The notes: generated from the letters alone by a model not told the origin. Positions 41,953 to 62,042 are shown, counted from the first letter of the stretch. The stretch is DNA of 64,000 nucleotides from Octopus bimaculoides (GCF_001194135.2 NC_068994.1:2781000-2844999); one strand, 5' to 3'. Made by a program: numbers and translations.

Positions 41953-42162
41953 GTACACATATACAGAGAGAAACAGATTATTAAGATAATTAAGTATAAT
42001 GAATAGATATATTAAGTTCCATAAACAACCAAAAGGCACTGAAAAATAAAGAAAACTCTTCCACACTCCAACACATACAGTGCAGATGTACAAATACACA
42101 TATACATACAATTACAAAGTTATAACACAAATTCCCAAATAAAGATTCTACTTCCTATCATC

Positions 42163-42292
42163 TGACTCACAACTGCAGTTCATCGATATGCAGCGCTAGT
42201 CATACTACAATAGCAGTTGTAACACCAGAATGCTATGCTGGGATGCACATCTCTGATCTCATATTATGGAAACAATGGATTAAACAATGAAG
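42163..42292 (+). promoter_or_regulatory. Unit 2 promoter cassette and non-coding first exon
   Basis: TGACTCACAA at 42163, GCAGTT at +50, GGATTAA, donor AG|GTAAGT at 42293; homologous blocks precede units 3 and 4. Confidence 0.7.
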
Positions 42293-44031
42293 GTAAGTCT
42301 CCCTATCTTGACATTTGCCGTTTAATTCCATTTTGGATGACACTTGATATTCTAGGCAAAACATAACAGATAGTGAAATCTAGTATTCACTTCCACCATT
42401 CGTGAGAGTGGCTACTACAATAGTTGCAATACAATTATATGTAGAAGGATGACATTTTTCCATAGCAGTCAAAACCAAACAAATTACAAATTTATAAGAT
42501 GAGATAATTAATCATATAATCTCCTATAGATAGGCAGAATATATTTTATACATATGGTTATTTTTGTTTAGTTAAAATATAATGTATACAACTGTTTCAA
42601 TTTATTGGCTGCTTACTTGAAATAATAACTTTGTCACTCTTGTGTGTGAAAAACTAACACAACCATGGTTTGTGCTGATAATTTTGAAATTATTTTGCAA
42701 TTGAAGATGAAAGTGATTTGTTAAAGAAATAATAAAATTTTCCACATACCAGAGAAAAAAATTCATATTACTAAATTTCCCATAAAATTTAACAGATATA
42801 TTTATGACACATGTAATTGAAATACAGAAATTTATAATAAGACAATCACAAACTATTATACATAATTTTGCATTAATCTCTTAAAATATAAATATATAAA
42901 TACTGGAAAATGTTGTATCGTAATTTATTTTTATGTAAAATGTCTCCTATCAAAATTAACTTTAAAAAATAGTTACCACTTAAAAATATGTAGTTGAGAA
43001 ATTATACTTCTGAAATTTTACAGCCATGTTGTAACGAAATTCTGCTATCTCTTGACTAACATGAGCAGAAGGAAAATAGCAATCTGGCATTTATAAATTC
43101 CATAAAGAATTAAATCTACTGCATCTAAACATACAATGAAATTTATTTTTAATTTTAACTACACTATTTATCACATATATTTCTGTATTATAATTATTAT
43201 AAATTCCTTACATGTGAGATTATAAGCAATTTTGTTCATTGTTTATCTGCATACATATACATATCCACTTGTACTTACTTATACAATATATACATAAATA
43301 CAATATACATTTTACACTAAAGTAAAATTATAAAAAGCTTTGTTCATTGCTATCATCCAAGCTGCATTATAAAAATTTAGAAACAAAAGTTTGTATTTCT
43401 CCTGAAACCAAATTTGCAGAAAAGTTAATTGAACCTTATCCTTAAATATTTGTAAATAGCATCAGCCGAAACAGAAAAAAAAATTCTCATAATAAAATGT
43501 ATTAATTTGTCATAACAATATTTTCCTCCTCTATATTGGATTTCCAGGGAAGTAACTCTTCATATAATCTTTATACAGGTCAAACACTAAAAGTTGATGT
43601 CATACAAATGTGCTGAACCAAATCTTGTTTGGTATCTAGTTCCATCTTTCCACAACCAGAGTTAAAATTTCATTGCTGGTTAAATTTTATCTTTGTTATC
43701 AATATAATGTAGTAATATAAGTATTACTATCGTTTTAACTCACTTGGCCTAACTACAATTAAAAGAAGATCTGAAGAGTAGCGATTGAATGTTTAAGTCA
43801 GGAAGATGACGCTAACTGTCAATGTTAGCAATGCGGCATAAATAAATACAAATGTGCAGTTTTTTCAAAGCCAACAGCATTAATACTGACACATAAGAAT
43901 AGCTATAGTAGGATTACTTTTCAGTTAAATATTCTTGCAATAATCTCTGGTAATACATAATTCTGGACATGATTTGCATTTGAGATAAATAAATAAATAA
44001 ACAACTGCATTCATCTTATCTTTGTTTTTAG

Positions 44032-46541
44032 GTGCTGATAAATTTGGGGATCAATGATGATCACAACAATGACTATGTACACACTACTATTGTTCATTGC
44101 ATACACAGGGCTGCCAGTTGTTATTTCTGCAAATATTGTTTACCATATCAATGAAGAAGAGAGTCCTCACACCTATATAGGAGACATTGCAATTGATTCT
44201 AACTTATCATACTCTCTTACACTTCAACAACATACTGTTGTTACATTTACACAATTGCAAAGGAAAGTGTCGAGTGGTTCTCACTTATTTAATGTCACCA
44301 ACTCAGGAAAACTATACACTACTCAAACACTAGATGCTGAGTCCCTGTGTATTTACAAGAAAGAATGTTTTAAAATTGTCAAAGTAGCAGTGAGGAAAGC
44401 AGAAACATTTACAAAAATATTAAAGATTAAAATAATTATAGAAGATATTAATGATCACCAACCACAGTTTCCAGAAAATGAAATGAAATTAGAATTTTAT
44501 GAGACGGATGTAAAAGGAATTTCAAAATCAATACCAAATGCTGTTGATAAAGACATTGGCCTTCTTAATTCTAAGATTACATATAAACTCAAAGATAAAA
44601 GTAAGAAATTCTCACTATCCATATTTAAAGGATTTAATGGAATAAACTTACTTAAAATCACCCTAGAAGGAATGTTAGATAGAGAATCAAAAGACACTTA
44701 TATGTTACAATTGGTGGCTAAAGATGGTGGCTCTCCACCAAAAGAGGGTTTATTGAATATAGAAATATCTGTTATAGATGTTAATGATAATCAACCACAG
44801 TTTCCTCAGCAAATATACAATATCTCTATTAGTGATACACATCACATATCTACTCCTGTTTTTATCTTATCCGCTACAGACTTAGATTCAGATAAAAATG
44901 GAGATATTACGTATAACTTTTATCAAAAGGCAAGTTCTTATGCTGAAAGAAATTTTAAATTAATGTCAAATGGAGAAATTTTCCTAAATGAGAACTTTTA
45001 TAAAGATAGGGAACAAATTTATAAACTATATATTCAAGCCAGGGATAGAGGAAGACCTCCTTTAAGTTCTACAGCAATGTTGATTATCAATGTAATTAAC
45101 AATCAAAATAATGCCCCAAATATAAACATAGATTTTGTATCACCTTTAACAGAGTCTTCTACAGCTATTTCAGAAGCAAGTCAACTGGGTAGTTTTATAG
45201 CTTATGTTATGGTCATTGACACTGACAGTGGACCTAATGGACAAACTAAATGTAATATTCATCACAAAATGTTTCAACTTTCTAATATGGGTTCTAAAGA
45301 ATATAAAATATTGGTGAAAGAACCTCTTGACAGAGAAACTATAGACCATTTTGTTGTTTCTATTGTATGTCATGACATGGGATCACCTCCATTAAAGACT
45401 AAGAAACAGTTCTCTGTCAAAGTAACTGATGTCAATGATGTAGAACCACATTTTACCAAAGAGACATTCCAATTNNNNNNNNNNNNNNNNNNNNNNNNNN
45501 NNNNNNNNNNNNNNNNNNNNNNNNNNNNNNNNNNNNNNNNNNNNNNNNNNNNNNNNNNNNNNNNNNNNNNNNNNNNNNNNNNNNNNNNNNNNNNNNNNNN
45601 NNNNNNNNNNNNNNNNNNNNNNNNNNNNNNNNNNNNNNNNNNNNNNNNNNNNNNNNNNNNNNNNNNNNNNNNNNNNNNNNNNNNNNNNNNNNNNNNNNNN
45701 NNNNNNNNNNNNNNNNNNNNNNNNNNNNNNNNNNNNNNNNNNNNNNNNNNNNNNNNNNNNNNNNNNNNNNNNNNNNNNNNNNNNNNNNNNNNNNNNNNNN
45801 NNNNNNNNNNNNNNNNNNNNNNNNNNNNNNNNNNNNNNNNNNNNNNNNNNNNNNNNNNNNNNNNNNNNNNNNNNNNNNNNNNNNNNNNNNNNNNNNNNNN
45901 NNNNNNNNNNNNNNNNNNNNNNNNNNNNNNNNNNNNNNNNNNNNNNNNNNNNNNNNNNNNNNNNNNNNNNNNNNNNNNNNNNNNNNNNNNNNNNNNNNNN
46001 NNNNNNNNNNNNNNNNNNNNNNNNNNNNNNNNNNNNNNNNNNNNNNNNNNNNNNNNNNNNNNNNNNNNNNNNNNNNNNNNNNNNNNNNNNNNNNNNNNNN
46101 NNNNNNNNNNNNNNNNNNNNAACAACTGCTATCATACTAACACTGTTTGTTAGTAATGATACATCTCCAATGTTGACTGCTGTCCCATTCCAATCTGATA
46201 ACAACCTAAATATGACTTGGATAATTATCATTGTAGCAGCAGCTGTAATACTATCTGTGGCTATTGTGGTGTCAATAACACTGTGTGTTTTTAAATGTAT
46301 CAATCACTTCAATAACTTGCCTGCACCAGCAGATAATCCAAAATTTCTCTCAAGGACTGAGATGAGACAAATCCTGTATCAGACTAATAATCCTGTTGCA
46401 ATAACTAGAAATGCAGACGACATATTTGCTAGAAATCTTCAATCAATAAAGCCTAAAAGTCCTTACTATCCTGAATCAGAACAGTTGACCAATGAATGGA
46501 AATTCTCAACAACACCTAGGAGGTTACCACCTACTCCTCAG
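44032..46541 (+). CDS. Protocadherin unit 2, large exon (ATG 44054 or 44069); EC5 to most of EC6 lies in N-gap 45475-46120
   Basis: Acceptor TTTGTTTTTAG|44032; EC1-EC4 open; TM and tail after the gap; donor CAG|GTATAG, phase 0. The frame change across the gap is attributable to gap sizing. Confidence 0.95.
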
Positions 46542-47573
46542 GTATAGTTCACACAAATTTTTCTGTCTGTAATATATGATGTTTAAATTCTTTATTTGTC
46601 TATCCTTTTAGATTTTAGTTTGTTTTTATGATTTTATATTATCTGTTTTCTTTGAGATCTTCTAGTTCCAAATCTTGAGGAACCCAGTGTTCTAACCTAA
46701 TTACATTAATGTTTTGAAAATCTTTCAGGACATATTAGTGTTAAAATCCACATTGAAAACAATATACTCAATTTAAAATTAGAATTTTAAAAGGAAATAA
46801 TCCTAATAATTGCTGGTGAGTTGACAAAATCATTAGATATGAGAAAAACCTAATAATATATGACAGCAAAGTATGTTCTGAGTTCAATCCCAGTAGGAAC
46901 CAACTTTGTCTTTCATTCTTTAAGAGTGATAAAATCAAGTACCAATCAAATATTTGGATCCATATTTTTCTCTTCCATAAAATTTGAGCCTTGTAATCAA
47001 TAATTGAAGTCCAAACCAGTTTTCTGTGATTCAAGATAAATTCTAAATACTTCAGCAAATCACCACTTAGGATATCTCAATCTGCTGGAAATAACAAAGA
47101 AATATCTCTTAAATCTCTTATGTCCAAAACTACTATCTAAAATAATCAAATGACACGCTGGTTGATGTTGTCCAAGATAACCTTTAAAAAGACAGTATGC
47201 TTACAGCTTGAATGGGTCATAGGTCTACTCAATAAGATTTGACCTTTGGCTAAATGACAATAGCCACATGTGTACTTAATAGTATAATATTCTACCTTGT
47301 GAAATAATTTTCACAACTCTACATTCAATTGAATATTTAAATTATTATTAAGAAATGATATGATCCAACAGATGTACTGTTCTTTAATGTCCCTTCTTAA
47401 CCATCTCAAATTTAATTAATTATAAAGAGGATATTGCATAATTAGATCTATTGATATATCTATTTAGGTTGATTTAGATATGTTTTATGAAAAACTGTGC
47501 AAAATTGGTAATTTAAATGTACACATCTAAGCAATTAAATTGTAAATGTAAATTTTTGTTACTTTCATGTTAG

Positions 47574-47730
47574 ATCTATAATAAGCAGGTTTCTGATGGG
47601 TCATCTGAGCAAGGCGACAATAATAGTATTGTGACATCAAACAATCTAAATGACACATTACCATCTCAAAAGGATCGCAACCGTGGATGGAGTGAAGGAG
47701 ATATTTCACAACAAACTTCAATAATATCAG
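47574..47730 (+). CDS. Protocadherin unit 2, tail exon A (IYNKQVSDG...SNNLNDTLPSQKDRNRGWSEGD...SG)
   Basis: CATGTTAG| and G|GTAATT; 157 nt, phase 0 to 1; open. Confidence 0.9.
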
Positions 47731-47955
47731 GTAATTTGCCAAATATTATCACTTTTACAAAGTTGAATTCTTATAAAGGCATTGGCACAGTTGTATCATA
47801 TATAAACAACTTTTTAATGTAATATGAATAGTTCACTAGTGAGAAAAATTTTAATCAAGAGGGTTCATAGTATAATAGTTGAGTGTTAAATATATCAAAT
47901 GTTAAAGTTGAAGTAAATGGTTATTTAATATGAACATATGGTTGATGAATTAGTT

Positions 47956-47991
<36 letters not shown>

Positions 47992-48073
47992 TCTGTAAAA
48001 GACATAAATTCAAAAGAAGCACACTCTAAGATGTAGAGCAGTATATATTAAAAATGGGGAAGGCCAGTTTATG

Positions 48074-48128
48074 GGATTACCTTAGGTTTCCTGTCTATAA
48101 AGGATTTATGGTGTATTGTCAGATCCCA
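48074..48128 (-). ncRNA. Degenerate type I hammerhead ribozyme at Penelope 3' end
   Basis: Minus strand GGGAT / CTGACAA / stem II / GAAA CC TAA GG TA / ATCCC; the G8 position reads A. Confidence 0.7.
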
Positions 48129-50069
48129 AAATTTGTTGGCCCAAAACCTCTTTAAAATATGGAGGAGGAAATGCCTCACTACTCAGAGGTAATAATTGGG
48201 GATCATCTCCCTTTGCTATCAGCTATCAACTTCCAGCTGTGCCATCATCTTGTGGGCTCCGAAAGGCTAGCAGGAACCTCCTGAAATGTAAACATGGCCC
48301 CCAAATCTCTGTTCTGGAGTTAAAGCTGTGCCCTGGTTCGAGTGAGTTCTTTAGGATTCTTGCCTGTCCAGCTATGCATAACTTGCAACACTTTATCCAG
48401 TTGATGTAGGGGCATTGATGTAGAGGCATGGGTTCTTGGTGTTGCTGGAGGTGGTGGTAGTGGCATCAGTAATGGTATTGCCATTGCCAGTTAAGATGAG
48501 GTGCTGTTGTATATTATGGTCCTCGTCATTAGTGGGAGAGTTGCCATTGCTGCTAGCAGTGTCATTAGCTGTGGTTCCACTGGTGTTTCTCCTAGGGCCA
48601 CTATCACTGCTGCTGCTGTTGCCATTGTTGTTATCATTGCCATGATTGCTGGCAGTGTCACTGGACCTGTTGCTGCTGCTATAGGAGTTGTCAGGTCTAC
48701 TACTGTTGACGTTAGCTGCTGCTGATGGCGATGTTGCTGTTGTTTTTGTTGTCGGTGACGTCAGGGGAACTACCAATGCTGTTGCTTGTGCTGTTTTCCT
48801 ATTGCTGGTAATGTTGTTAACTGTGGCGATGGTGGCAGCATTGCTGGTTCTGTTCTCATATCTCCAACTGCTACTACTTCTACTGGTGGTATTGACAGGG
48901 TTTGCTAGTACTTCAGCTTCATAGACAAGCCCCTTTGGTTTCACAGTGGCCTCCCACCAGGCATCTGTTGTAGTCCTGGCATGAACATCCTGCCTCTTCC
49001 TCATGGCCTAGGTGCACTAAATAGGATGCTCTTAATATTGGGACCACAGCTAAATGAGACTCTAATGTTGTGCCTGTTAAAAATGGACCCATATCTATGG
49101 GAGCTAGTGAAATGCTTATCTAATAATTTAAGGGATATTCTATTTATGGGCTTTTGTGTTAAGAGAGAAGAAGGGGTGCTTCTTTCTGTGGCTGCTGGGT
49201 TCCAGCATGTAGGAGATGTGATCCTTAAATCCACTGGCAGCTAGAGCCTCATTATAGTATGGGGCTGCTGCATCGAAAATCTCTTCATTTGTGATCCTCT
49301 TACTAACACCCTTCCCCAGGTTTTTGAACATAATGGGTGGGTGGAAGTGTTGATGTACATTAGTTTCTCATTTGGTTTGCAGTAGGACCTGTATGTACTA
49401 GAGCTCAAGATGAGTGTGACGTCTAAGAAGTTTGCAGTTGTGAGGTTGGTCTCTATGGTGATTTTCAATCCCATGGAGGCAAGCATGCTGATTAGATCTC
49501 TTCTCAGCCTGTCTAGTGTATGTCCATTTGCTCCCCTAGAGATGGCCGGGGCATCATCTCTGTAGAATCCAAAGAGGACAGAGGGGAACTTTTTCCTAAA
49601 GGTGTCAAGGATATACAATCTGATGAGGTCACATACGTAAGTACTGGTGAAGACCCCCATAGCTACATCAAAGGAGCCCCCCATGCCGATCTTTTGTTGA
49701 ACAGCACTCTCTTTCTGGCATGCATAATGGCTTCTATATCTCTGTCGCTAATGTTAGTGAAGCCCCTAGCAAAAGAAAGCTTCTTGGCCAGTAGCCTTTT
49801 TGATACAGATGGATAAAAGTCGACAATATCAAACTGGGTGAACCTTGCTCTGCCTCTTCCCTTGTTGGTGTTAAACCATGCAGTCACTTCATTGGTGTTG
49901 CACCACAAAGAAAGGTTGGTGGCCCTCCTTATGTCGTTATTGATATTTCACACTATGTGCTTGCTCGCCAGACCAATCTTGGATTTGGCCGGATTGATCA
50001 GGCAGCATTTGGGGTTTGAGGCAAACTTTGATTTATGACCTTTTATGGTAATGAAGGCGTTTCTTTTTT

Positions 50070-50117
50070 GGGATCTGATGATATGCCATAAAGCTAAACC
50101 CTTTATGGATGGGAAAC
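50070..50117 (+). ncRNA. Partial hammerhead (inverted copy at Penelope 5' end)
   Basis: GGGAT CTGATGA ..CCATAAAG ctaaacc CTTTATGG.. GAAAC; stem III and the 3' strand of stem I are deleted between AAAC microhomologies. Confidence 0.6.
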
Positions 50118-50134
50118 CAGCCTTCCCCATTTTT

Positions 50135-50165
<31 letters not shown>

Positions 50166-50216
50166 AAACATTTTCCTTTCAAAACTATATTTGAAATACT
50201 TTTCTGTACATTTCAG

Positions 50217-50305
50217 AATACAGTAACTACAGACCAAACATACCTCCAACACCAAAGAGTGATCATGAACAAGATACATATCTAGAACCAGTATATAAGA
50301 AATAG
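50217..50305 (+). CDS. Protocadherin unit 2, terminal exon (EYSNYRPNIPPTPKSDHEQDTYLEPVYKK*)
   Basis: ACATTTCAG|, phase 1, TAG at 50303-50305; paralog at 60528-60616. Confidence 0.9.
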
Positions 50306-51419
50306 CAAACTCAAAAATAGCAAAATGTTGATTCTTTATCATAGACATTATTAATTTACATTGAGATGTAACATCAAACATTACTAATAATAGTATTAAG
50401 ATAAATGATACAAACAAATTCATCAAAGTTTATGTATTAAAATTATTTATTTGCAGTTATTTACATGGAGAATATGCCTTAGCTGTAAAGTGAATAAAAT
50501 CATTAGAATTCTAAATGTTCACAAATATTTCATTGATCCTTTTTAAGGCCATTTTTATACAATGGGAGTTCTTGTATAGATAATTACTACAAGAAATATG
50601 TTCTGCTCTACTTCTTTCATACTTTAACTCCTTCCTCTCCTAGCATAAAGCTACCTCTCTGGGGGATCATAGTTTTGCAAGATAAAAGGTGAGCTATTTG
50701 GTGCTGGTGGCATGAAGAAAGCACCCTGTAAATGTTGTAAAGTGGTTGGTGTTAGAACAGGCATCTAGCCATAGAAATCATGCCAAAGTAGATAGTGGAC
50801 CCCAGTGCAGTCCTGTCAAACCATCCAGATCATGAACATGGGTTGAAACATTGAAGTTAAATGATGAAGCTTATCAATTTCCTATGAAAATTCTGATTTC
50901 AGATTGATCATTATATATTATAATGCATATATTCCAACAAGCTACCATATTTGTCCCATTTTATTTTGAGCATTATAATTTTAGTTGATATTTTAAATTT
51001 ATTTTTTAAATAAATTATGAATAAATAAAAATAACAGATAAAGTTACAGCAATTTTTCAGTTTTCCTTTTATTTTAAATGAACAATTTTAGTAATTCAAT
51101 AATTACTGTAAGAACTATTGGAAAATAGCTGTTAAGGATAAAAATTAAAAGGACTATATATCACAAAAATGTGTGTGTGTGTCAGTGTGTGTAAACACAA
51201 ATGCATGCACACATACATGTTTAGACAGATATATGTGAGTGAATTTAGAATTATGTATATGGCACAATCTGATGATTATATGCTATATTCAATTATAGAC
51301 CAAAATATATTTCACTTTAGACCAAAAACAATCTTCATTTATAGTGAAATAATTTTTAAATATATATGCAATACACAAAGTTAAATAGAATTCCCTAACA
51401 TGAAACTGCCACCCAACTA

Positions 51420-51546
51420 TGACTCACAAATCTACACAACCAAGATACTGCTATTGTAGCATTATTACAGCAGCAGTTATACTGGATCACTACGCCATGA
51501 TGAATGTCTTCTCTAAGGGACAAGAACAAAGGATTAAGCAAAATAG
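51420..51546 (+). promoter_or_regulatory. Unit 3 promoter cassette and non-coding first exon
   Basis: TGACTCACAAATCTA, GCAGTT at +53, GGATTAA, donor AG|GTAAGT at 51547. Confidence 0.75.
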
Positions 51547-52525
51547 GTAAGTTTGTTTACATTACAATTTCATATGAATTGCTTAGATAATATTTTGAGA
51601 TAGAAGTACTTGATAACAGTTAAAAGTGTGCACCTACAGAATAAATATACAAAGAAGGAGAAAAGAAAAAAACATTGATTCCCCCAGTATCAAGAGCAGC
51701 TACTGGAATAGAAGTATAGCTACTTCTAGAACAAAGATGCCTTTTTACAGTTACCATCACACAAAAATTCTGGTTTGTCAAGTAAAATTTATTTGATCAT
51801 TTATTTTCAATATTAGTTGTATGAAGTGTAACCATTTTAAGTGGTTCTCAGTACATGTTTAATTATCTCATTAATATGTATCAATTATAGTAACAATAAT
51901 GAAGTCATTTAACTATTTTTTATCTGCAATCAACATTTTGCACCATGCATATTGAAATACAGAAAAAAATATTGAATTACAAAATGTCTTTAGAATAATG
52001 TGAAATTTTGTTAAAAAATGCTTCAAATTTTAGGATGTAAATTACATAAATAATATTATATATTCATGTAATAATTATACTCTCATTCACTATATAGAAT
52101 TTTTTCTTTTCATTGAGTCAACGGTTTCATTTTGATTACAAGTGATAGTTCTTACTGTAATTAACTTATAACCGATATTTAATTTAACACTTTTTTTCAT
52201 GCCTAATAAATATTATTGTATGTTAGCATGGTAATTTAAATCAATATTCAAAATCAGGTATATAAAACAGTATATAACTCAAAGTATATTCTTTAAATAC
52301 CCAACGTTATTAGGAATTTGAAATGCAACATCAATTTCTTAACAAAACCCTATTAGAAATATGAAGAAAGCCACTGTTTACTTGCAATTTTCTTCATTAT
52401 ATTTTTTGTCATTTTAGCTATGATCCTTAGTATAAGCATTATTTCCCCACATCACTTTGATGAGAACCGTAAACTGGAAAAGACAATCATTATTATCTTC
52501 ATCATATCGTTATTTTATGTTTATA

Positions 52526-53606
52526 CAGGATCCTTAATTTTTTAGGTCATTTGTGTGAATTTAGAAAAGAAGCATAGATTATCAAAGAAAAGCTATATTA
52601 GCAAACAAATTGGTACAAATAATCTTGAGAATCCTTTTATCACATCTATTCCATGAATTTACCGTTAACATCAATGGTTGTTTCAATATGGAGTTAGAAG
52701 CATTGACATACCCAAATCAGATGATCTTTATCAGTTTTGGATATAGTGCTGGTTATGATGGACTTGAGAGATTGCATGGTGTTATGGGGATATTGACTGA
52801 CCTCTCTCTCAACTGGCCCTATATGTAATAGTCCAATAGACTGAGGTCTGGTGAACTAGAAAGCCATGTGTTTGGGAGAACATGACCATGGAGATTAGCA
52901 CACATCCATGCTTGGGTTGTCCTAGTCTTATGAGACAGTGCAGAGTCCTGTTGGAAGATATACAGTCTTCTATTGCATACTCTGCCCAATCAAGGCCTCA
53001 CAACTTTCTCCAACACCTCTGTGTAGACAGCAACATTGTCTCTTAAGCCTTGTGAAAAGATGTGTGGATGCATGACATATTCCTTGTTGCTGATGACTCC
53101 CAAAACCATCACAGTTGCTGAGAACTTATTATGTTGGAACATCATTCAGATCTCCGTATAACTATGTGTCAATCCTTCGGTTTACCTTTTTGGCCAGATT
53201 GAAGTTTTTCTCATTCGAGAAAAACCAAATCATTCCAGCCTTTTGGTGTCTTAATTCATTCAGCAAACACTTCGCATGGATAGAACAATTCTCACTTCTC
53301 ACATGCAACTTGTACAGGATGTCCTGATGCACATCTCTTCTGATGGTGATTTTGAAAGCTTAAGGTCCTTTGTAATGGCTCTGATTGAACCATTGGAGGT
53401 TTTATTGATTGTTTCTTAGACATTTTGTACAAGATTCTGTGTTCTGATGGTATTAGGACATTGTGTATGCATTTAACATTAAAGTACGTTTTCTTAAAGT
53501 GCAATATGGTAGACTCGAAATAACTCAAAATGTCAGTCCTCCTCCACAAAAGTAAGGAGTGATTATATTTTATAACTATTATCTATTATAACCCATATAA
53601 ATCCTG
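52526..53606 (-). mobile_element. Tc1/mariner superfamily (maT/DD37D-like) transposon remnant in unit 3 intron 1
   Basis: WFFSNEKNF, VMVLGVIS, YIFQQDSALSH, SSSPDLSLLDYYI; short inverted ends TACAGGAT / ATCCTGTA. Confidence 0.8.
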
Positions 53607-53763
53607 TAACTGCATGTTCAAAAACATTTATAAAGAAAGGAATCATCCCACCAGAGCTGTACCAAAACATTCTTTTAATAACAGCTTAACCCATCTCTCA
53701 AATGCTACAGACATAAAATACACATTATGCATCAAAGTCATTTTAATGTTAATGGTTATAATA

Positions 53764-54200
53764 AGGCAGTGAGCTGGTAGAATTGTTAGCATGCCATGCA
53801 AAATGCTTAGTGGCATTTCATCCATCTTCACATTCTAAATTCAAATCTGCCAAGGTCAACTTTGTTTTTCTTCCCTTCAGGGTCAATTAAAAATGGATTG
53901 GTTGAATACTGAGGTCAGTGTAGCCAGCTTACCCCTCCTCTAAACTTGCTGGCCCTGTGCCAAAATTTGAAACCAATATTAATAATAACATAAGGTGGTG
54001 AGCTGGCAAAACCATTAGCGCGCCAGGCAAAATGCTTTGCAGCATTTCATCCATCTTATAGTCTGAGTTCAAACTCTGCTGAGTTTGACCTTTGCCTTTC
54101 ATCCTTTCGGGATTGACAAAATAAGTAGCAATTGGTCACTGTGGTTGGTTACATCGACTTACTTATTTCCTCTGAAATTACTGGCCTTGTGGTCTGAAAG
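53764..54200 (+). mobile_element. Two tandem tRNA-SINEs (antisense partner at ~55015-55140)
   Basis: Same family as 10198-10640. Confidence 0.85.
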
Positions 54201-55798
54201 CAACATTAATAATTGCATTATGTTTAAGAGCTGTGCTCTGTGAATCCTAAAAATAAAAAATGCAAGTTACCTAATGAGTTTTCAGTAATTAGGAGCAAGA
54301 CGGATAAAAAATATTGAGGAAATGTCTCTGAAGCTCAGTGTAATTTACGCAACCATTGACTTAAATTGAGAGACATTAACCATGTCAACTTCACCAGTTT
54401 CAATGGGCTCTGCAATGGACATGGGCACAACCTTTTCTTTCTGACTAAAAATAAATCATATTGCAGAACAGAACAAAACAAATATGTAATTGGACAATTC
54501 TCTACTTGAATATAAATAATTGCACTTGATTAACAACAAAAATAATCTAAATGATGTGAATATAGCTTTCTATTTGGTATAATTTTAGGGATATGTTTCA
54601 AATGGAAAATTTCATATTAATTCCAATAACAGTTAAAAGAGGAATATCATTAAATAGGCCACTATTTCATTGTATAATTAAGAAAACAAACAGAAGATAA
54701 TTATGTAAATACTGAGCTGCATTACTTAAAAGCTATTGAAAATTTTCAATGCAGTGTGTAGTGTTCAACCGAACGTATTCAATCATTTTTATACATCATA
54801 AAAATCATAGTAGAAGGGAACAGGGGAAGTAACTCTAAAGTTTTAGAAAGTTTTAACAAAAATGTGCATTTATATTAGTTGACTCAAAAAAGTAAGATAT
54901 AAGTATGAAACATAAAAAGAAGGTAATTATATAAGAATTAGTTTTGCAAGTATGTATCACAAATTGCAAATATTTATATAATGAGTAGGTCTTTATTACA
55001 TTTTACATTAGTAAAGTAAAATTTTATTGACCCCCAGAAGGAAGGAATGCAAAGTTGACATTGGTGGGATTTCAACTCAGAATGTAAACAGCTAGGACAA
55101 ATACCTAACTGGATAATGCTCTAATGATTCCATCAATCAAACACAACGCCATTTTTTAATAATAAGAATGGTTCTATATAAGATATATAAAAGAAACAGA
55201 TTCGCTTGTCATACTGAGTTGGTTCAGTTTTCAAATCATTCTACTCTCCAAACTTTCATAGGCACAACTCATTATTAGTAAAATATCTTTAGTTTATGAT
55301 CTAGTTATAAAAATACTTCATATCAGTTCAATTTGTGATTTTGTGTGATAATCACATTTGCATCTCAGTAAATCTTTTTTTTTTTTATATTGTCTTATGT
55401 TTTATTAAATTAAGCAACACTTCATTCTCATTTACATAATCTGTGTTATACAAAATAGCTGAAAATTATATTTTATAATTAAGATAGTTTTAATTTAAAT
55501 TTTCAGAATAAAGTATATTGATGTGAGCTAGCGACTATAACATCTTGCTAATTTTCTTTTCCTGTACCTAACTGGTACATGCAACTGTGAAAACTAATTA
55601 AAAAAAAATCAATCAGGTCATTACCTTGACTATATTCTCAGTTTAACAAATTCATCTGTTAATAAAAAATTTAAGACATTTTTAGAAATCTTAATTATGA
55701 CTGAAAAGTAAGGAGGATTTTATTTAAGATATGTACATTCTGTAATACTTTAAAATGTATTTGTGTCAAAAAGCTAATATTTTAATATTTCATTTTAG

Positions 55799-58206
55799 AT
55801 GTATGGATTTATGAATTGTAATAATGAATTACAATAATGAGTGTAATCAACACTCTGCAGCTTTACATTCTGTATGGGATAATGTATCCAGTTGTGTGCA
55901 TAGATATTATATACCATGTCAATGAAGAAAACAGTCCACACACATATATAGGAGATATCGCAGCTGATTCTAACATATCACATTCACTTATACACCAGCA
56001 ACATGCACTCATTACATTTACACAATTACAAAGGATGGTATCAAGTGGGTCTCAATTATTCAATGTCACCAGCTCAGGAAAACTATACACTACTCAGATA
56101 CTGGATGCTGAGTCTCTGTGTACATATAACAAGGAATGTTCCAGAATTGTTAAGGTAGCAGTGAGGAAAGCAGAAACATTTACAAAAATATTAAAGATAA
56201 AAATAATTATAGAAGATATCAATGACCACCATCCAGAGTTTCCAGATGATCGAATTAAAATAGAGTTTTATGAGACGGATGTAAAAGGATCAACAAAATC
56301 GATACCAAATGCTGTTGATCAAGACATTAGTCTTCTCAATTCTAACATCACATACAGACTCAAGGATAAAAGCAAGAAATTTTCACTATCCATATTTAAA
56401 GGATTTGATGGAATAAACTTACTTAAAATAACTCTAGAAGGAATGTTAGACAGAGAAGAAAAGCACAGTTACATGTTACATTTGGTAGCTAAAGATGGAG
56501 GTACTCCACCAAAAGAAGGCATACTGAACATATATATCACTGTTACAGATGTTAACGACAACCAACCAATGTTTACACAAAAATTATATAATACCACCAT
56601 CAGTGACGCACATCACATATCTTCACCTGTGATTCTTTTATCAGCAACAGATTTAGATTCTGGTCAAAATGGGAACATTACTTACTATTTACATAGAAAT
56701 ACAAATAAATATGCCAGAAAACATTTCAAATTAAATTCTAAAACAGGAGAGATTTTCATCAATGATAATTTATTTAGAAATAAAGAAAGTAAATATCACT
56801 TGTACATTCAGGCTAGAGATGGTGGAAATCCTTCATTAAGCTCCATGGCAATGTTGATTATCAATGTAATTAACAATCAAAATAATGCTCCAACAATAAA
56901 TATAGATTTTGTATCACCTTTAACAGAGTCTTCTACTGCTGTTTCAGAAGCAAGTAAAATTGGGAGCTTCATAGCATATGTTATGGTCATTGACACTGAT
57001 AGTGGACCTAATGGACAAACTAAATGTAATATCCACCATAAAATGTTCCAGCTTTCTAATATGGGTTCTAAAGAATATAAAATATTGGTTAAAGAACCTC
57101 TTGACAGAGAAACTATAGATCATTATGTTGTTTCTATTGAATGTCATGACATGGGATCACCTCCATTAAAGACTAAGAAACAGTTCTCTGTCAAAGTAAC
57201 TGATGTCAATGATGTAGAACCACATTTTACCAAAGAGACATTCCAATTCCTCACCTATGAAAACCAGAAAGTTGACTTCCCTATTGGCTTCATCAATGCT
57301 ACAGACCCTGATCTTGGAGAGGGAGGCCAACTTACATATTCTATCATCAATGATAACAAAAATGATAATATTCCTTTCCAACTGACAAAATATNNNNNNN
57401 NNNNNNNNNNNNNNNNNNNNNNNNNNNNNNNNNNNNNNNNNNNNNNNNNNNNNNNNNNNNNNNNNNNNNNNNNNNNNNNNNNNNNNNNNNNNNNNNNNNN
57501 NNNNNNNNNNNNNNNNNNNNNNNNNNNNNNNNNNNNNNNNNNNNNNNNNNNNNNNNNNNNNNNNNNNNNNNNNNNNNNNNNNNNNNNNNNNNNNNNNNNN
57601 NNNNNNNNNNNNNNNNNNNNNNNNNNNNNNNNNNNNNGAATACTGAGATCCAATGATAGAAACCTGTTTACAGTGAACTCACACACTGGTGTGTTATCTT
57701 TCTCTCGCACAGTTTACCAAAATGATGCAGGAACATATGAACTGGAATTTATAGTGAAAGATGGTGGTACACCAGTTCAGTCAGCAACAACTGCTATCAT
57801 ACTAACACTGTTTGTTAGTAATGATACATCTCCAATGTTGACTGCTATCCACTCACAGTCTGATAACAACCTGAATATGACTTGGATAATTATCATTGTA
57901 GCAGCAGCTGTAATATTATCTGTGGCTATTGTAGTGTCCATAACATTGTGTATTTTCAGATGTATTAATCATTTCAATAATTCATCTGCAGAAAAAAATA
58001 ATCCAAAATTTCTATCGAGGACTGAAATGAGACAAATCCTGTATCAGACTAACAATCCTGTTGCAATAACTCGGAATGCAGAAGAGATATTTAGCAGAAA
58101 TCTTCAGTCAATAAACCCTAAAAGTTCATACTATCCAGAGATGGAACAGTTAAGTGGCGAATGGAAATTCTCAACAACACCCAGGAGACTTCCACCCATT
58201 CCACAG
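55799..58206 (+). CDS. Protocadherin unit 3, large exon (ATG 55837); part of EC5-EC6 lies in N-gap 57394-57637
   Basis: Acceptor TTTCATTTTAG|55799; signal peptide, cadherin repeats, TM WIIIIVAAAVILSVAIVVSITLCIF; donor CAG|GTACGT, phase 0. Confidence 0.96.
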
Positions 58207-59506
58207 GTACGTAAGCAGTAAATTCATTTTCTAAATGTATTGTTACTATTTTTACATTATACCTATTAATTCCAAATCACCATACAGTAACAGTTAAATA
58301 TATTTTGAATATTTGTCAAATTCTGTTTATAAATCCTTGAATGAAATCTCTATTGGTAACACTACACTTTTGACTAATATACACATTTTAAGCTTAGTTT
58401 CATATTTCCCTTTTTATCTAAAAGCCAGAAATTTTAGATGGTATTCAGGTATTGTAAGCCCAGATATAGTGTGAATGTTATTTTCTTGTTCATAGTCATT
58501 TCTAGCATGGATATGATTCCAGTGAGTAAACATTTAACCTGGCATACCTTGGAACCCACAATTTTCTGCCATTTTCTTTTCTTTTCTGGAAATGATTTTG
58601 TTATATAAGGATTCTATAATGTTACTATTTTCATTATATTCACTTCTGATCTACCACAATGGCTTTCAGCTGTTTCCTCTATCAAGCTTTAATACATTTA
58701 TATTATCATATAACCTCATAATAACCTATTAAACTTATGCATTTTTATATTCCCTTCTTGATGTGATGTTTCCTTCACTGCATTTCTCATTTTTAATAAT
58801 TGGACAGACAATAACACTAATACATACCTGTAACTAAAATATATTTTAATTAAATAATTGCATTTTCTAAAAAGCAATTTCCCAACATTCAGAAGTTATT
58901 ACTTTTAAACTTCGTGAACTAATTTTTGATATCAACTTATTAAAAATACTATAAACATTCTAGGGAGCACCATATGTGCCATGATTTTATGAAACTGACC
59001 TGCAGAATTTTTAAGCAAAATCAATTTAATGTTCATATATACTGCAACATTGCTGCCTATTTTGTATACCATAGTATGTTAAGGTCCACATACATAGGTA
59101 TGATATATCAGCAGCTCTGGATTTGTTGATCATACCTAGTTATACAACCAACTATGCTGAATCAATAACGAAGCCCCTATGGATTCCTCAGTCTACTTGA
59201 AACAATACTCAAATTTCCTTTAAATCTTTCCTACTATCTTTAAAAAGAAGTATACTTTATTAATGTCATCCTACCCTACAATCAGAAACTCAGTGTGGTC
59301 ATGGCTGGAATGCCTTTTACTATAAACTTACAACTGTCATAAGTTTGGACTATCAATACTACAAAAAAGAATATTAGAATAAATTTCCCAATTTCCCTGA
59401 AAATATTCCAACTAGTTTTCTTCAAAGATGTAAAATAGAAATCATAGAAATATCATGCACTATAATCTCTCAAATATTCATCTAATCCATGTTGTTCTTA
59501 TAATAG

Positions 59507-59654
59507 CTCTATAATAAAAAGGTTTCAGATGGATCTTGTGATCAAATTGACAACAGCAGTATTGTGACATCAAACAACCTAAGTGATACATTGCCATCTC
59601 AAAGAGATCGTAAACATGGATGGAATGAAGCTGATATTAAACATCAGACATCAG
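59507..59654 (+). CDS. Protocadherin unit 3, tail exon A (LYNKKVSDGSCDQ...SNNLSDTLPSQRDRKHGWNEAD...SG)
   Basis: TTCTTATAATAG| and G|GTAAAT; 148 nt, phase 0 to 1. Confidence 0.85.
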
Positions 59655-60527
59655 GTAAATTACCTATTATCAACAATTGTGTATATTGACTTTGCCTAAA
59701 CTTACTGGTACAATTACATCATATTTATAAATGAAACATTTTTTTCTTTTGTAATATAAGAGGTTTATATCAAATACTCAGGAGTGTATAATACTGTATT
59801 TAAAGTTTATAGAGCACATGAACATATAAGGCACATTTCAATTTTGGCAGGTTTATTCTTGAACTGCCATTTGCTTGTAACCTAAACCCAAACCTCATGC
59901 TTATGAAATGCAGGCTGATTTTCTGGAACACATTTTTAAAAAGTGGCCTGATAAGCAACTGAATATGGTATTTGAAAAGAATTTCTATACTAAGGTTAAA
60001 CCACAGGCAAAATTGACATTTCAACTGTAGCAGTGTTGTTTTAGCATTCACTTTTCCATGCTTACATGGATCAGATGGAATTTGTTATCACCAACTCTCA
60101 ACTGCTTCCAAGCAAGATCATATTTCCCCATGATCATATATGTTTTCGTGGAGGACTGGAAGCAAAGAAAAGTGCTTGAATGATGATGACACTTGTTTAC
60201 ACCTATCCCTACTCACTACACAAAAGCATGTAGAAGGGACTTGTTTGAGTTTCTGTCTACCAAATCCACTCACATGTTTTTGGTCATCCCAAGGTTGTTT
60301 TAGAAGACACTTGTCTAAGGTGCCAAGCAGTGGGCCTGAGCCCAACTCCATGTGGTTGGGAAGCAACCTTCTTTACTGCAGACCCATTTATCTATGATAA
60401 ATATAAATTGCAAGTAAAACCTAATATGCATGTAAGAATTATTTAGAAAAATGTCATTTACTCTTCATTCATAGACACAATATCATAAGAAAACTATGAT
60501 ATATTTATGTTTTTCTCTATCTTTCAG

Positions 60528-60616
60528 AATACAGTAACTATACACCAAACATACCTCCAGTACCAAAAGGTGAACATGAACAAGACACATATCTTGAACC
60601 AGTATATAAGCAGTAA
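60528..60616 (+). CDS. Protocadherin unit 3, terminal exon (EYSNYTPNIPPVPKGEHEQDTYLEPVYKQ*)
   Basis: TCTATCTTTCAG|, phase 1, TAA at 60614-60616. Confidence 0.9.
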
Positions 60617-60771
60617 ATATATATAACCAGTAAACTCAATATTAACATGACTTCAATTATTTGCCCCAGAGATTATGAAATTTCTCTGGAGTTTTATCAT
60701 CAGTAATAGAACTTAATCAGAACATTTCATTAGTAAACACAGAATAACATATAGAATCAGGTAATTAATGC

Positions 60772-60811
<40 letters not shown>

Positions 60812-61530
60812 GTGTAAATATTTTCATTATGTCTGCACCTTAAGAGTAAACAAATGGGACAATTGAAATTCAAAACACATGATTATGAAACTGATTATTT
60901 TGGTTACACATTAGGCCAAAATCATGTAGGATATCATATAATACTTTAAATTCTAACTATTATATTAGAGATGCTACTAGTGAAAAGGAGTTTAAGCTTC
61001 ATATAGTCAGCAGTCTGAAAATACAAGAACGTCATATTAGAAAACACTTGCTTCAATAATCTACCATTTGTCACTATCTATTGTATTTTCAAATAATATA
61101 CGATTTAAAAAATAAAAATATGAGTTGATATTTTCAAATTATAAAGATTATCTTTAAATTATAAAATTATCAATAACTAAGGAAAATTATAAAACATTTA
61201 GAATTCAATCTAAATGAATACTTTATGCCATAATCCACTGTCACATATGTTGTGATATTGCTGTTGAGGATAGAAGTTAATATTCACATATTGTAATAAT
61301 CATTGCATGAATATGAGTATGTGTGTGCCCGTATGTTAGTGTGTTGTAAGCATTCATGTATAAGAGCAAATCTGTTATATATATATGTATATATATTGCT
61401 GTATATTAAAAATACTTACTGCAAAATTCATTATTAAATGTTTTAATCATTCTTTAAAGTGTATAAATCTAAATAGATACAATAAGAATAGATAAAAAAA
61501 AGTATTTTAAAGTGTAGTTGGCTCCCTCTA

Positions 61531-61653
61531 TGACTCACAAATCTATTCCGTAAAGATACTGTCATTGTCAAACTACTACAGCAGCAGTTACACAGGAACA
61601 CTACAAAAGAACAAATGCCTGTCATAAGAAACACAAAAGATTAAATAATTTTG
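61531..61653 (+). promoter_or_regulatory. Unit 4 promoter cassette and non-coding first exon
   Basis: TGACTCACAAATCTA, GCAGTT at +53, AGATTAA, donor TG|GTAAGT at 61654. Confidence 0.75.
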
Positions 61654-62042
61654 GTAAGTCATTTTACATTGCAATTTTTCATTTAATATTTTGTTTATAT
61701 ATATTTCAGCATTGATGTATGAGAAATAGACAATAAATAGTACTATGTTTAGTGATTATATAACACAGAGAAGAAATTGGGAAGCAATAGAACTGTGTAG
61801 CCATTAGAGCAATTATTACAGCACTGGTGTAGTTACTTTAAAACAGATATCTTTGTCTGCGAATGTTCTGCAAATACTGATCTGTCACTCGATTGTATTT
61901 ATCACATAATTTCAGATATATTGTTATAATTCACATGTAACATTATTTAATAAATTAGTTTAAACAGGGAATATTTTTTATATAATTATTGCTTATCATC
62001 ACTGAAGAAGTATTTTAAATACTGATTTGCATAGCATATACA

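What the first reader, a model, noticed from the sequence alone, without database searches (positions are those of the whole stretch)
42163..61653. Conserved per-gene promoter cassette: TGACTCACAA, +50-53 GCAGTT, GGATTAA, G|GTAAGT
Seen: at 42163, 51420 and 61531 the same AP-1-type heptamer lies 130, 127 and 123 nt before a perfect donor, with an initiator-like GCAGTT at fixed spacing, although surrounding DNA is not alignable. Known: vertebrate clustered Pcdh promoters share a CTCF-bound conserved sequence element that underlies stochastic promoter choice; TGACTCA is the Fos/Jun site. Inference: a convergent, bZIP/AP-1-type and potentially activity-responsive shared element in cephalopod Pcdh arrays, with non-coding first exons that ORF-based annotation misses.
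Basis: partly seen in the sequence, partly recalled or inferred. Interest (0 to 1): 0.7.

Follow-up and report, generated by a model that had tools for sequence, protein, structure and literature searches.

The report
Conserved untranslated first exon of octopus protocadherins
Each protocadherin gene in this stretch of the Octopus bimaculoides array is preceded by a ~150-base promoter-proximal, non-coding first exon that stays almost unchanged between octopus and argonaut while all surrounding DNA has diverged beyond alignment, making it a candidate shared control element for this neuronal gene family, though the factor that reads it is unknown.

Summary
TGACTCACAA, AGCAGTT, GATTAA and G|GTAAGT occur in the same order and spacing at 42163, 51420 and 61531. 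Shuffled sequence gave 0 such arrangements.

The motifs are not independent. They are the invariant islands of one homologous ~150-nt block running from about -22 of TGACTCAC to the splice donor. Each block lies 1.7-4.3 kb upstream of an acceptor placed just before a protocadherin start codon.

The window is O. bimaculoides CM046614.1. The same block precedes orthologous genes in O. vulgaris (3 copies) and Argonauta hians (4 copies). Copy C is 87-88% identical to the A. hians copies, against 54-58% at fourfold-degenerate coding sites, and the flanks do not align. This indicates strong purifying selection.

An annotated O. vulgaris protein reads exactly across the predicted donor-acceptor junction.

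TGACTCAC is invariant in 10/10 copies of this subfamily but absent from 5/5 copies in a sister subfamily. Those copies keep CAGCAGTTACAC-GGAACACTAC and GGATTA(A/T)AC plus the donor. No block was found upstream of gene A, its A. hians orthologue, one distant paralogue or one cuttlefish gene.

The start of transcription, AP-1 binding and activity dependence remain untested. The assembly gaps lie inside coding exons and do not touch the element.

The parts
42141..42298 (+). Block B: conserved segment from about -22 of TGACTCAC to the donor, taken as promoter-proximal sequence plus untranslated exon 1 of Pcdh gene B. Contains TGACTCACAA 42163-42172, AGCAGTT 42212-42218 and GGATTAA 42277-42283. Exon ends at 42292; donor GTAAGT 42293-42298.
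   Evidence: (nhmmer E=7.5e-30)
42293..44031 (+). Predicted intron 1 of gene B (1.7 kb). It does not align with paralogues or orthologues.
44032..46547 (+). Gene B large exon: acceptor AG at 44030-44031, ATG at 44054. Interrupted by the assembly gap 45475-46120, across which the frame is not preserved. Downstream coding exons at 47574-47747 and 50213-50302.
51355..51362 (+). TTTAAATA, 65 nt upstream of TGACTCAC. An A/T block at this position is conserved in 9/10 copies and is a candidate TATA element.
51398..51552 (+). Block C: TGACTCACAA 51420-51429, AGCAGTT 51472-51478, GGATTAA 51531-51537. Exon ends at 51546; donor 51547-51552. It is 87-88% identical to the Argonauta hians copies.
   Evidence: (E=4.5e-40)
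51547..55798 (+). Predicted intron 1 of gene C (4.25 kb).
55799..58221 (+). Gene C large exon: exon 2 starts at 55799, ATG at 55837. An out-of-frame upstream ATG lies at 55825. Assembly gap at 57394-57637. Downstream coding exons at 59507-59653 and 60521-60613.
61462..61475 (+). TATAAATCTAAATA, 69-56 nt upstream of TGACTCAC. Candidate TATA element of gene D.
61509..61659 (+). Block D: TGACTCACAA 61531-61540, AGCAGTT 61583-61589, AGATTAA 61638-61644 (not GGATTAA). Exon ends at 61653; donor 61654-61659. Closest to the O. vulgaris copies.
   Evidence: (E=3e-35)
61654..63542 (+). Predicted intron 1 of gene D (1.9 kb).
63543..64000 (+). Gene D exon 2, which runs off the window. The in-frame start is ATG 63563 (MNYNN...).

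Best explanation
Each block is the promoter-proximal region plus the untranslated first exon (about 125-165 nt, depending on the unmapped start site) of one complete protocadherin transcription unit.

How it arose and persists:
- Tandem duplication copied the whole unit: promoter, exon 1, intron, large coding exon and small 3' exons.
- Purifying selection has since held the block nearly constant in one octopod Pcdh subfamily, while the upstream DNA and the intron diverged beyond alignment.
- This has lasted since before Octopodidae and Argonautidae split.

How it works, as shown or predicted from sequence:
- Exon 1 ends at an invariant GTAAGT donor.
- It is spliced over a 1.7-5.6 kb intron to an acceptor 20-40 nt upstream of the start codon.

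What is inferred:
- The invariant islands are most likely binding sites, on DNA or on the RNA leader, that give the subfamily a common expression logic. These islands are TGACTCAC at the 5' edge, ATACTG, CAGCAGTTAC(AC) with (GG)AACACTAC, and GGATTAA next to the donor.
- TGACTCAC fits a bZIP/TRE site. It equally fits an initiator-like CTCA+1CA or an element at about +35 of a TATA-driven start.
- Which factor reads it, and whether it serves gene choice, is inferred and not shown.
For: Sequence:
- Order and spacing are exact in the three window copies, with 0 matches in 100 shuffles.

Per-gene placement:
- All 11 large exons of the two related subfamilies that have at least 6 kb of upstream sequence available carry one block 2-5.7 kb upstream on the same strand.
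- Four further blocks face genes beyond the ends of the fetched loci.

Selection:
- Exon-1 alignment z = 10-60, against about 0-3 for 600-nt flanks on both sides.
- O. bimaculoides copy C against A. hians: 108/124 and 109/124 identical, against 0.58 and 0.54 at fourfold sites of the adjacent coding sequence. Binomial P = 2e-12 and 6e-16.
- No non-coding similarity survives in the 10 kb upstream of gene A between the same two species.
- TGACTCAC is the longest invariant run in the 10-copy alignment (8 columns; P = 0.0016 by column shuffling).

Splicing:
- GTAAGT is present in 14/15 copies and GTCAGT in one.
- Acceptors lie upstream of every ATG examined.
- The O. vulgaris annotated protein P0080 ends ...KHNGLNNV|DFEVYP*. 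This is encoded by the last 24 nt of block Ovul_2, then joined exactly at the predicted donor to the predicted exon-2 acceptor of the next gene.

The block belongs to the downstream gene:
- In A. hians the first block follows a gene of a different subfamily, lying 5.9 kb past that gene's end and 3.9 kb before its own large exon.

Context from papers:
- Cephalopod Pcdh diversity arises by full-gene duplication without shared constant exons (PMC9068888).
- Cephalopod Pcdh clusters are described as 'still-enigmatic' and no functional data on their regulation are reported (PMC10658181).
Against: - No transcript reads, CAGE or chromatin data could be consulted for this window. Genes B and C are not in the protein collection at 100% identity, so the TSS and the three junctions in O. 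bimaculoides are predictions.
- The one annotated junction belongs to an odd read-through model of the upstream O. vulgaris gene. Its entry into the block needs a non-canonical acceptor.
- Conservation cannot separate DNA-level from RNA-level function.
- TGACTCAC is missing from the sister subfamily, so it is not essential to the exon as such.
- Only a few loci per species were sampled, because the number of locus look-ups was capped.
Confidence: 0.75

Rival explanations
1. TGACTCA is a Fos/Jun (AP-1) site about 50 nt upstream of a GCAGTT initiator. It makes Pcdh promoters activity-responsive and acts as a cephalopod-wide analogue of the vertebrate CSE.
For: - The perfect TRE heptamer is invariant in 10/10 copies across three species, and TGACTCAC is the longest invariant run.
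- CAGTT resembles the arthropod initiator TCAGTY (my own knowledge).
- AGCAG is also invariant.
Against: - The heptamer is absent from 5/5 copies in the sister subfamily, which read AGTCTCAC, ACCTCAC or TGACTGAC.
- The block was not found upstream of gene A, its A. hians orthologue, P0008 or a cuttlefish Pcdh.
- No TATA-like sequence lies about 30 nt upstream of CAGTT. A positionally conserved A/T block at -60 to -70 from TGACTCAC would put TGACTCAC inside the transcript.
- In the sister subfamily the CAGCAGTTAC unit is repeated 2-4 times in tandem, which is not how an initiator behaves.
- There are no binding or induction data.
Confidence: 0.15
2. The conservation is mainly at the RNA level. 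The block is a 5' leader that controls translation, stability or localisation, through upstream AUGs/uORFs, protein-binding CAG/CUAC-rich motifs, or a small hairpin. The promoter itself needs little of it.
For: - Conservation fills the whole predicted exon up to the donor and stops there.
- An ATG at one alignment column is present in all 9 aligned copies.
- The composition is strand-asymmetric and CA-rich.
- The CAGCAGTTACAC-GGAACACTAC unit is tandemly expanded in the sister exons.
- The inverted repeat ACTGC..TTGT/ACAG..GCAGT is paired in 98.8% of cells, with two double changes.
Against: - The uORFs differ in frame, length and peptide between copies (sequence read).
- Folding energies are ordinary, with z from -1.0 to +1.3.
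- Hairpin covariation is weak (15/500 shuffles reach it) and the structure was derived from the same sequences.
- There is no Rfam match.
- Conservation also extends about 22-40 nt upstream of TGACTCAC, and to an A/T block at -65.
Confidence: 0.3
3. The similarity has no function. It is left over from very recent tandem duplication, or is maintained by gene conversion among neighbours.
For: - Genes B, C and D are tandem paralogues, 70-76% identical at the N-terminus.
- Homogenisation by gene conversion has been proposed for cephalopod Pcdh arrays (PMC9068888).
- The A. hians copies 1-3 are 96% identical to each other.
Against: - The block is an island. Introns and upstream DNA of the same paralogue pairs are at background.
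- Copy C is closer to the A. hians copies (0.87-0.88) than to its neighbours B and D. Copy D is closest to O. vulgaris. The lineages therefore predate speciation and were not homogenised.
- Identity far exceeds that at fourfold sites.
Confidence: 0.03
4. The block belongs to the upstream gene. It would be a conserved 3'-UTR element, or an internal exon of read-through transcripts that chain neighbouring Pcdh genes, and not an independent first exon.
For: - Blocks lie only 0.7-1.8 kb past the stop codon of the preceding gene.
- The O. vulgaris model P0080 runs from one gene into the block and on into the next gene's exon 2.
- A pyrimidine tract followed by AG sits about 30-40 nt before the donor in most copies (sequence read).
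Against: - In A. hians the first block follows a gene of a different subfamily, 5.9 kb past that gene's end and 3.9 kb before its own large exon.
- The P0080 entry junction is non-canonical, and the model ends at a stop 7 nt before the next ATG, which is typical of a merged annotation.
- The A. hians gene models end before the blocks.
Confidence: 0.07

Closest known systems
Conserved sequence element (CSE) of vertebrate clustered protocadherin promoters, CTCF-bound (my own knowledge; reviewed in PMC7811963)
   Same: - One copy per variable gene or exon, in the same orientation and at a fixed position relative to the start of the transcript.
- Conserved among paralogues and across species while the surrounding promoter DNA diverges.
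- Lies in a large tandem array of neuronal protocadherins.
   Different: - There is no sequence resemblance. CGCT occurs in only one copy (gene B), and nothing resembles a full CTCF motif.
- The block is AT-rich and about 150 nt long, not about 22 bp.
- It is, or abuts, a separate untranslated exon split from the coding exon by a 1.7-5.6 kb intron.
- Octopus genes are complete units without shared constant exons (PMC9068888), so no promoter-coupled splicing choice is involved.
- It is restricted to one subfamily, or two in diverged form.
AP-1 / TPA-response element TGA(C/G)TCA bound by Fos/Jun-type bZIP dimers
   Same: A perfect heptamer, invariant in 10/10 copies of the subfamily across three species. 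The flank (A/T)TGACTCAC is compatible with TRE consensus flanks (my own knowledge).
   Different: - There is no evidence of binding or inducibility.
- It sits at or very near the likely start of the transcript, not in an upstream enhancer.
- It is lost in the sister subfamily, which otherwise keeps the exon.
- It lacks the GC flank of MARE/NF-E2-type sites.
Mammalian odorant-receptor gene architecture: non-coding 5' exon(s) spliced to a single large coding exon, with short homeodomain and O/E motifs near the TSS (my own knowledge)
   Same: - A very large tandem family expressed in neurons.
- An untranslated first exon, an intron, and an acceptor just upstream of the ATG.
- Short shared motifs around the TSS. 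GGATTA is the reverse complement of TAATCC, the K50 homeodomain (Otx/Pitx-type) core.
   Different: - The motif content differs.
- Here the entire exon, not only short motifs, is conserved.
- No evidence bears on singular or stochastic expression.
Chelicerate shortened-Dscam arrays with one promoter per 5' variable unit (cited in PMC6339937)
   Same: Recognition-molecule diversity made from tandem units, each with its own promoter, in an invertebrate.
   Different: These use variable 5' cassettes joined to constant exons. No comparable conserved leader is known to me.

Membership tests
Vertebrate Pcdh CSE-type promoter element | One copy per variable gene, same orientation, fixed position near the transcript start | tested here: met
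   11/11 large exons of the two subfamilies with enough upstream sequence carry one block on the same strand.
Vertebrate Pcdh CSE-type promoter element | CGCT-box consensus or CTCF-type motif | tested here: not met
   CGCT occurs only in copy B (GCAGCGCTAG). The conserved GCTCCCT upstream of TGACTCAC matches only one half of a CTCF motif by eye. No matrix scan was available.
Vertebrate Pcdh CSE-type promoter element | Promoter contiguous with the variable coding exon, with no intron in the 5' UTR | tested here: not met
   Invariant donor, and a 1.7-5.6 kb interval to the acceptor.
Vertebrate Pcdh CSE-type promoter element | CTCF/cohesin binding and enhancer looping | not testable with these tools
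   No ChIP or Hi-C data were accessible.
AP-1 / TRE site | Heptamer TGA(C/G)TCA | tested here: met
   10/10 copies in the B/C/D subfamily, but 0/5 in the sister subfamily.
AP-1 / TRE site | Bound by Fos/Jun-type bZIP proteins; stimulus-inducible transcription | not testable with these tools
   Needs EMSA or DAP-seq and expression after stimulation.
Cis-spliced untranslated first exon | Consensus 5' splice site at a conserved position | tested here: met
   GTAAGT in 14/15 copies and GTCAGT in one, always at the 3' edge of conservation.
Cis-spliced untranslated first exon | 3' splice site just upstream of the start codon of the coding exon | tested here: met
   Pyrimidine tract plus AG 20-60 nt before the ATG in B, C, D and the orthologues.
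Cis-spliced untranslated first exon | The junction is observed in transcripts | tested here: inconclusive
   The exact junction is present in the annotated O. vulgaris product P0080, which is a read-through model. No reads or transcripts were retrievable for this window.
Cis-spliced untranslated first exon | Mapped transcription start upstream of the donor | not testable with these tools
   Only sequence hints exist: an A/T block at -60 to -70, TATA-like runs at about -25 to -30, and CTCA+1CA.
Structured cis-regulatory RNA / Rfam family | Match to a curated family, or unusually stable and covarying structure | tested here: not met
   No Rfam hit at the blocks. Folding z from -1.0 to +1.3. Only a 9-bp hairpin with weak covariation.

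The most novel reading that the evidence does not exclude
Octopods independently evolved a per-gene cis-regulatory module for their protocadherin arrays that works like the vertebrate CSE. It would be a deeply conserved promoter/leader block whose invariant TGACTCAC is read by a bZIP factor (AP-1-like, possibly activity-dependent), together with Myb-like (TAACTG) and K50-homeodomain-like (TAATCC) sites. This would set which members of a subfamily a neuron expresses. Different subfamilies would carry variant blocks and therefore different regulatory inputs.
Probability: 0.15. Interest if true: 0.8.

Novelty: new variant of a known kind. Interest (0 to 1): 0.5.

Why it matters
Cephalopods and vertebrates expanded protocadherins independently. 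How cephalopod arrays are regulated is openly described as enigmatic (PMC10658181), and I found no promoter element for them in the searchable literature.

This is a short, sharply bounded non-coding block, conserved as well as or better than the adjacent coding sequence across octopod families. It gives concrete sequences to mutate, to use as bait for binding factors, and to anchor TSS and ATAC analyses. It also turns 'do octopus neurons choose protocadherins through a shared promoter logic?' into a testable question.

It has a practical use too. Genes B and C are missing from the current annotation, and first exons can be found by homology to the block. Subfamily-specific variants, with or without TGACTCAC, offer a natural experiment.

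Tried and rejected
1. Transcript evidence.
- Exact-protein look-ups for gene A found nothing.
- Searches for genes B, C and D returned no 100%-identical product.
- Logan contig L005 is a spliced Pcdh mRNA from another, GC-richer species and lacks the block.
- L008-L012 carry sequence that reads like an intron, ending in a pyrimidine tract and AG, upstream of the ATG. They look genomic or unspliced.

2. A block for gene A.
- The TGACTCA/TGAGTCA sites at 13099 and 13972 and the GGTAAGT at 6274 do not resemble the block and are not conserved with A. hians.
- nhmmer with the 10-copy profile finds nothing else in the window.

3. More distant genes. O. bimaculoides P0008 (L013) and the cuttlefish gene P0162 (L014) have no block within 10 kb upstream.

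4. My first identity calculation used cheap gaps and gave 0.70-0.78 even for unrelated flanks. I replaced it with local-alignment z-scores.

5. RNA families and RNA structure. Rfam hits in the region are microsatellite artefacts below threshold. Folding energies are unremarkable.

6. Conserved uORF peptide. An ATG is shared, but frames and stops differ between copies.

7. CTCF-like motif. Only half-site resemblance by eye.

8. Literature search for cephalopod immediate-early genes or AP-1 returned nothing useful.

Full report
**Where the window comes from.**
The 802-codon ORF at 15794-18199 (gene A) is 100% identical to an Octopus bimaculoides protocadherin. The genomic locus fetched for that protein equals window 5794-33902. 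By that offset the window corresponds to about 2,781,000-2,844,999 of CM046614.1 in assembly GCA_001194135.2.

The plus strand carries four protocadherin (Pcdh) genes:
- Gene A: acceptor at 15737/8, ATG at 15794.
- Gene B: ATG at 44054.
- Gene C: ATG at 55837.
- Gene D: ATG at 63563; the gene runs off the window.

There is also a remnant exon at 34942-35148. According to PMC9068888, O. bimaculoides Pcdh genes are complete, tandemly duplicated, multi-exon genes in a 43-Mb cluster, without the shared constant exons of vertebrates.

**Assembly gaps, tested first as requested.**
Both gaps inside the finding's span interrupt the large coding exons, more than 3 kb downstream of the element.
- Gene B: the sequence before the gap ends at residue 470 of the O. 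vulgaris orthologue (position 45472, frame 2). It resumes at residue 661 (position 46122, frame 0). About 190 codons are missing over 649 nt and the frame is not preserved, so the N-run length is only an estimate.
- Gene C: the two sides are 246 nt (82 codons) apart and in frame, but orthologues predict 92 missing codons.
- In both genes the two sides match consecutive parts of the same proteins on the same strand.

The gaps affect whether B and C can be called intact. They do not affect the element.

**The observation.**
- TGACTCACAA at 42163, 51420 and 61531.
- AGCAGTT at 42212, 51472 and 61583.
- GATTAA at 42278, 51532 and 61639.
- Exon ends at 42292, 51546 and 61653, each followed by GTAAGT.

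The composite pattern occurs three times in the window and never in 100 shuffles. The proposed acceptors at 44032, 55799 and 63543 are good 3' splice sites, 20-38 nt before the start codons.

Three corrections are needed:
- The third copy reads AGATTAA, not GGATTAA.
- A fourth TGACTCACAA, at 15910, is inside the coding sequence of gene A and is coincidental.
- The sequence between the motifs is alignable.

**What it is.**
The motifs are the invariant columns of one homologous block of about 150 nt, running from roughly 22 nt upstream of TGACTCAC to the donor.

A profile built from the block finds it only upstream of Pcdh large exons, always on the coding strand. It occurs:
- Three times in the window.
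- Three times in O. vulgaris (L003: 6012, 17772, 31620).
- Four times in Argonauta hians (L004: 7842, 14985, 23960; L002: 28167).

In each of these the donor lies 119-126 nt after TGACTCAC. Large exons follow 2.0-5.6 kb downstream.

Local-alignment scores for the block are 10-60 standard deviations above shuffled controls. For the 600 nt upstream, the first 600 nt of the intron and the last 600 nt of the intron they are at background, apart from one close O. bimaculoides/O. vulgaris orthologue pair.

The sharpest comparison is copy C against the A. hians copies:

| Comparison | Block identity | Fourfold-site identity, adjacent coding exon | Binomial P |
|---|---|---|---|
| Copy C vs Ahia_1 | 108/124 | 0.58 | 2e-12 |
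| Copy C vs Ahia_2 | 109/124 | 0.54 | 6e-16 |

A. hians belongs to a different family (Argonautidae) from O. bimaculoides (Octopodidae). The 10 kb upstream of gene A and of its A. hians orthologue share nothing but microsatellites and the acceptor. This confirms that neutral DNA between these species is saturated.

Copy C groups with the A. hians copies and copy D with the O. vulgaris copies. Several block lineages therefore predate the species split and were not homogenised. The block is under purifying selection at least as strong as that on the protein.

**Evidence that it is a spliced first exon.**
- GTAAGT is present in 14 of the 15 copies found and GTCAGT in one. It always marks the 3' boundary of conservation.
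- Every Pcdh large exon examined has an acceptor a few tens of nucleotides before its ATG. This includes gene A, a distant O. bimaculoides paralogue and a cuttlefish gene. An untranslated first exon is thus a family-wide architecture, even where this particular block is absent.
- The annotated O. vulgaris protein P0080 ends ...KHNGLNNV|DFEVYP*. The first part is encoded by the last 24 nt of block Ovul_2. The remainder is encoded by the first bases of the next gene's exon 2. The join is exactly at the predicted donor and acceptor.
- This is annotation-level support for the junction, not proof. The model is a read-through from the upstream gene and enters the block through a non-canonical site.
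- No transcripts for genes B-D could be retrieved.

**How general it is.**
A sister subfamily (63-68% protein identity to gene C) in O. sinensis (L006) and A. hians (L007) has a recognisable but diverged first exon.
- It keeps CAGCAGTTACAC(N)GGAACACTAC, tandemly expanded two to four times.
- It keeps GGATTA(A/T)AC followed by the GTAAGT donor.
- In place of TGACTCAC it has AGTCTCAC, ACCTCAC or TGACTGAC.

No block was detectable within 10 kb upstream of gene A, its A. hians orthologue, O. bimaculoides P0008 or the cuttlefish gene P0162.

The AP-1-like heptamer is therefore a subfamily-specific feature: 10/10 copies, and the longest invariant run in the alignment (P = 0.0016). The AGCAGTT and GATTAA-donor modules are shared more widely. 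None of them is a general cephalopod Pcdh element.

**Where transcription starts.**
This is unresolved. Three positions are compatible with the sequence:
1. About 35 nt upstream of TGACTCAC. This assumes the positionally conserved A/T block is the TATA element. That block is TTTAAATA at -65/-67 in copy C and A. hians, TATAAATCTAAATA in copy D, and is present in 9/10 copies.
2. At CTCA+1CA inside the motif. This fits the metazoan initiator consensus BBCABW (my own knowledge) and has TATA-like runs at about -25 to -30 in most copies.
3. This has no TATA-like partner, and the tandem repetition of that unit in the sister exons argues against it.

Under positions 1 and 2, TGACTCAC is at or just inside the transcript.

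**DNA-level or RNA-level function.**
Conservation alone cannot tell.

For an RNA role:
- Conservation fills the exon and stops at the donor.
- One ATG column is shared by all aligned copies.
- The exon is CA-rich and strand-asymmetric.
- A 9-bp interrupted hairpin (ACUGC..UUGU/ACAG..GCAGU) is paired in 98.8% of cells, with two double changes.

Against an RNA role:
- The uORFs differ in frame and length between copies.
- Folding energies are ordinary.
- The covariation is weak.
- There is no Rfam match.
- Conservation continues upstream of any plausible +1.

My best reading is a combined core-promoter and leader module. The conserved islands would be factor-binding sites. By sequence alone (my own knowledge) the candidates are a bZIP/TRE site (TGACTCA), a Myb-type site (TAACTG, the reverse complement of CAGTTA) and a K50-homeodomain site (TAATCC, the reverse complement of GGATTA). 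None of these was tested.

**Comparison with what is known.**
Functionally the closest analogue is the vertebrate Pcdh conserved sequence element. Both have one copy per variable unit, a fixed position, and conservation while the surrounding DNA diverges. Membership fails on sequence (no CGCT/CTCF motif), on architecture (a separate exon and an intron) and on scope.

The gene architecture resembles mammalian odorant-receptor genes, which have a non-coding first exon, a single large coding exon and short motifs near the TSS.

I found no description of such an element in the accessible literature. PMC9795677 only speculates that neighbouring expanded genes (Pcdh, C2H2 ZNF, GPCR) might be co-regulated through 'similar transcription elements'. 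PMC10658181 calls the clusters still enigmatic. Subscription-only papers, such as Wang & Ragsdale 2017, could not be searched.

**Verdict.**
It is a sharply bounded, strongly constrained promoter-proximal first exon, shared by a protocadherin subfamily across octopod families.

The specific interpretation is not supported beyond the presence of the heptamer. That interpretation held that this is a convergent, AP-1-driven, activity-responsive element common to cephalopod Pcdh arrays, with a GCAGTT initiator. The evidence narrows it to one subfamily.

This is a new variant of a known kind of feature. It is of moderate interest, mainly as an entry point for experiments.

Noticed in passing
window 34942-35148 (+), with 40214-40360: The C-terminal end of a Pcdh large exon (84-87% identical to residues 733-801 of the O. 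vulgaris orthologue) abuts the assembly gap 34728-34941, and a matching small 3' exon lies at 40214-40360. The rest of that gene is missing. Either the 214-N gap hides more than 2 kb, or this is a truncated remnant. Its first exon was not found.
   Followed up: partly
L003 (O. vulgaris OX597827.1) 16407-16450, 17863-17890, 23441-23462: The annotated protein P0080 is a read-through model. It leaves the normal last coding exon early, enters the next gene's untranslated exon 1 through a non-canonical site, and ends in the next gene's exon 2, 7 nt before that gene's ATG. This is either a merged annotation or real chaining transcripts between neighbouring Pcdh genes.
   Followed up: partly
window 63563-63600 and 55825-55840: In gene D the ATG homologous to gene C's start (63577) runs into TAA after six codons. 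The in-frame start is the upstream ATG at 63563 (MNYNN..., as in O. vulgaris P0121). In gene C the same upstream ATG (55825) is out of frame and forms a short uORF overlapping the main start.
   Followed up: partly
window 28923-30169 (-): Two adjacent ORFs have weak reverse-transcriptase (RVT_1) and zf-RVT matches, both below Pfam cut-offs. This looks like a degraded LINE-type insertion between gene A and the next Pcdh unit.
   Followed up: partly
window 44054-50302: The old UniProt model A0A0L8I168 (P0138) is gene B. It was spliced across the assembly gap and uses 48495-48698 and 49538-49645 as extra exons, which the orthologues do not share. Genes B and C have no 100%-identical entry in the protein collection, so they appear to be unannotated in the current assembly.
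   Followed up: partly
window 41885-41951, ~51169-51192, 60775-60815: (TG)n microsatellites lie 0.2-0.7 kb upstream of each of the three blocks. An O. sinensis copy has one about 40 nt upstream (L006 ~4050-4066). This may simply reflect how common such repeats are in octopus DNA.
   Followed up: no
L006 4100-4329 and 20070-20398; L007 6041-6221, 15200-15387, 23128-23307: In the sister subfamily the first exon has grown to 180-330 nt. It did so by tandem repetition of a ~35-45-nt unit, (CTA)n-(CAG)n-TTACAC-N-GGAACAC-TAC, together with CA and CCA runs.
   Followed up: partly
It is paired in 98.8% of cells across 9 copies with two double changes. It is not thermodynamically unusual.
   Followed up: yes
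window 15738; L013 ~9960; L014 ~9906; L008 ~143: Every Pcdh large exon inspected has a 3' splice site 20-95 nt upstream of its ATG. This includes genes without the block and one gene from an unidentified species. An untranslated first exon therefore seems to be a general feature of cephalopod Pcdh genes.
   Followed up: partly
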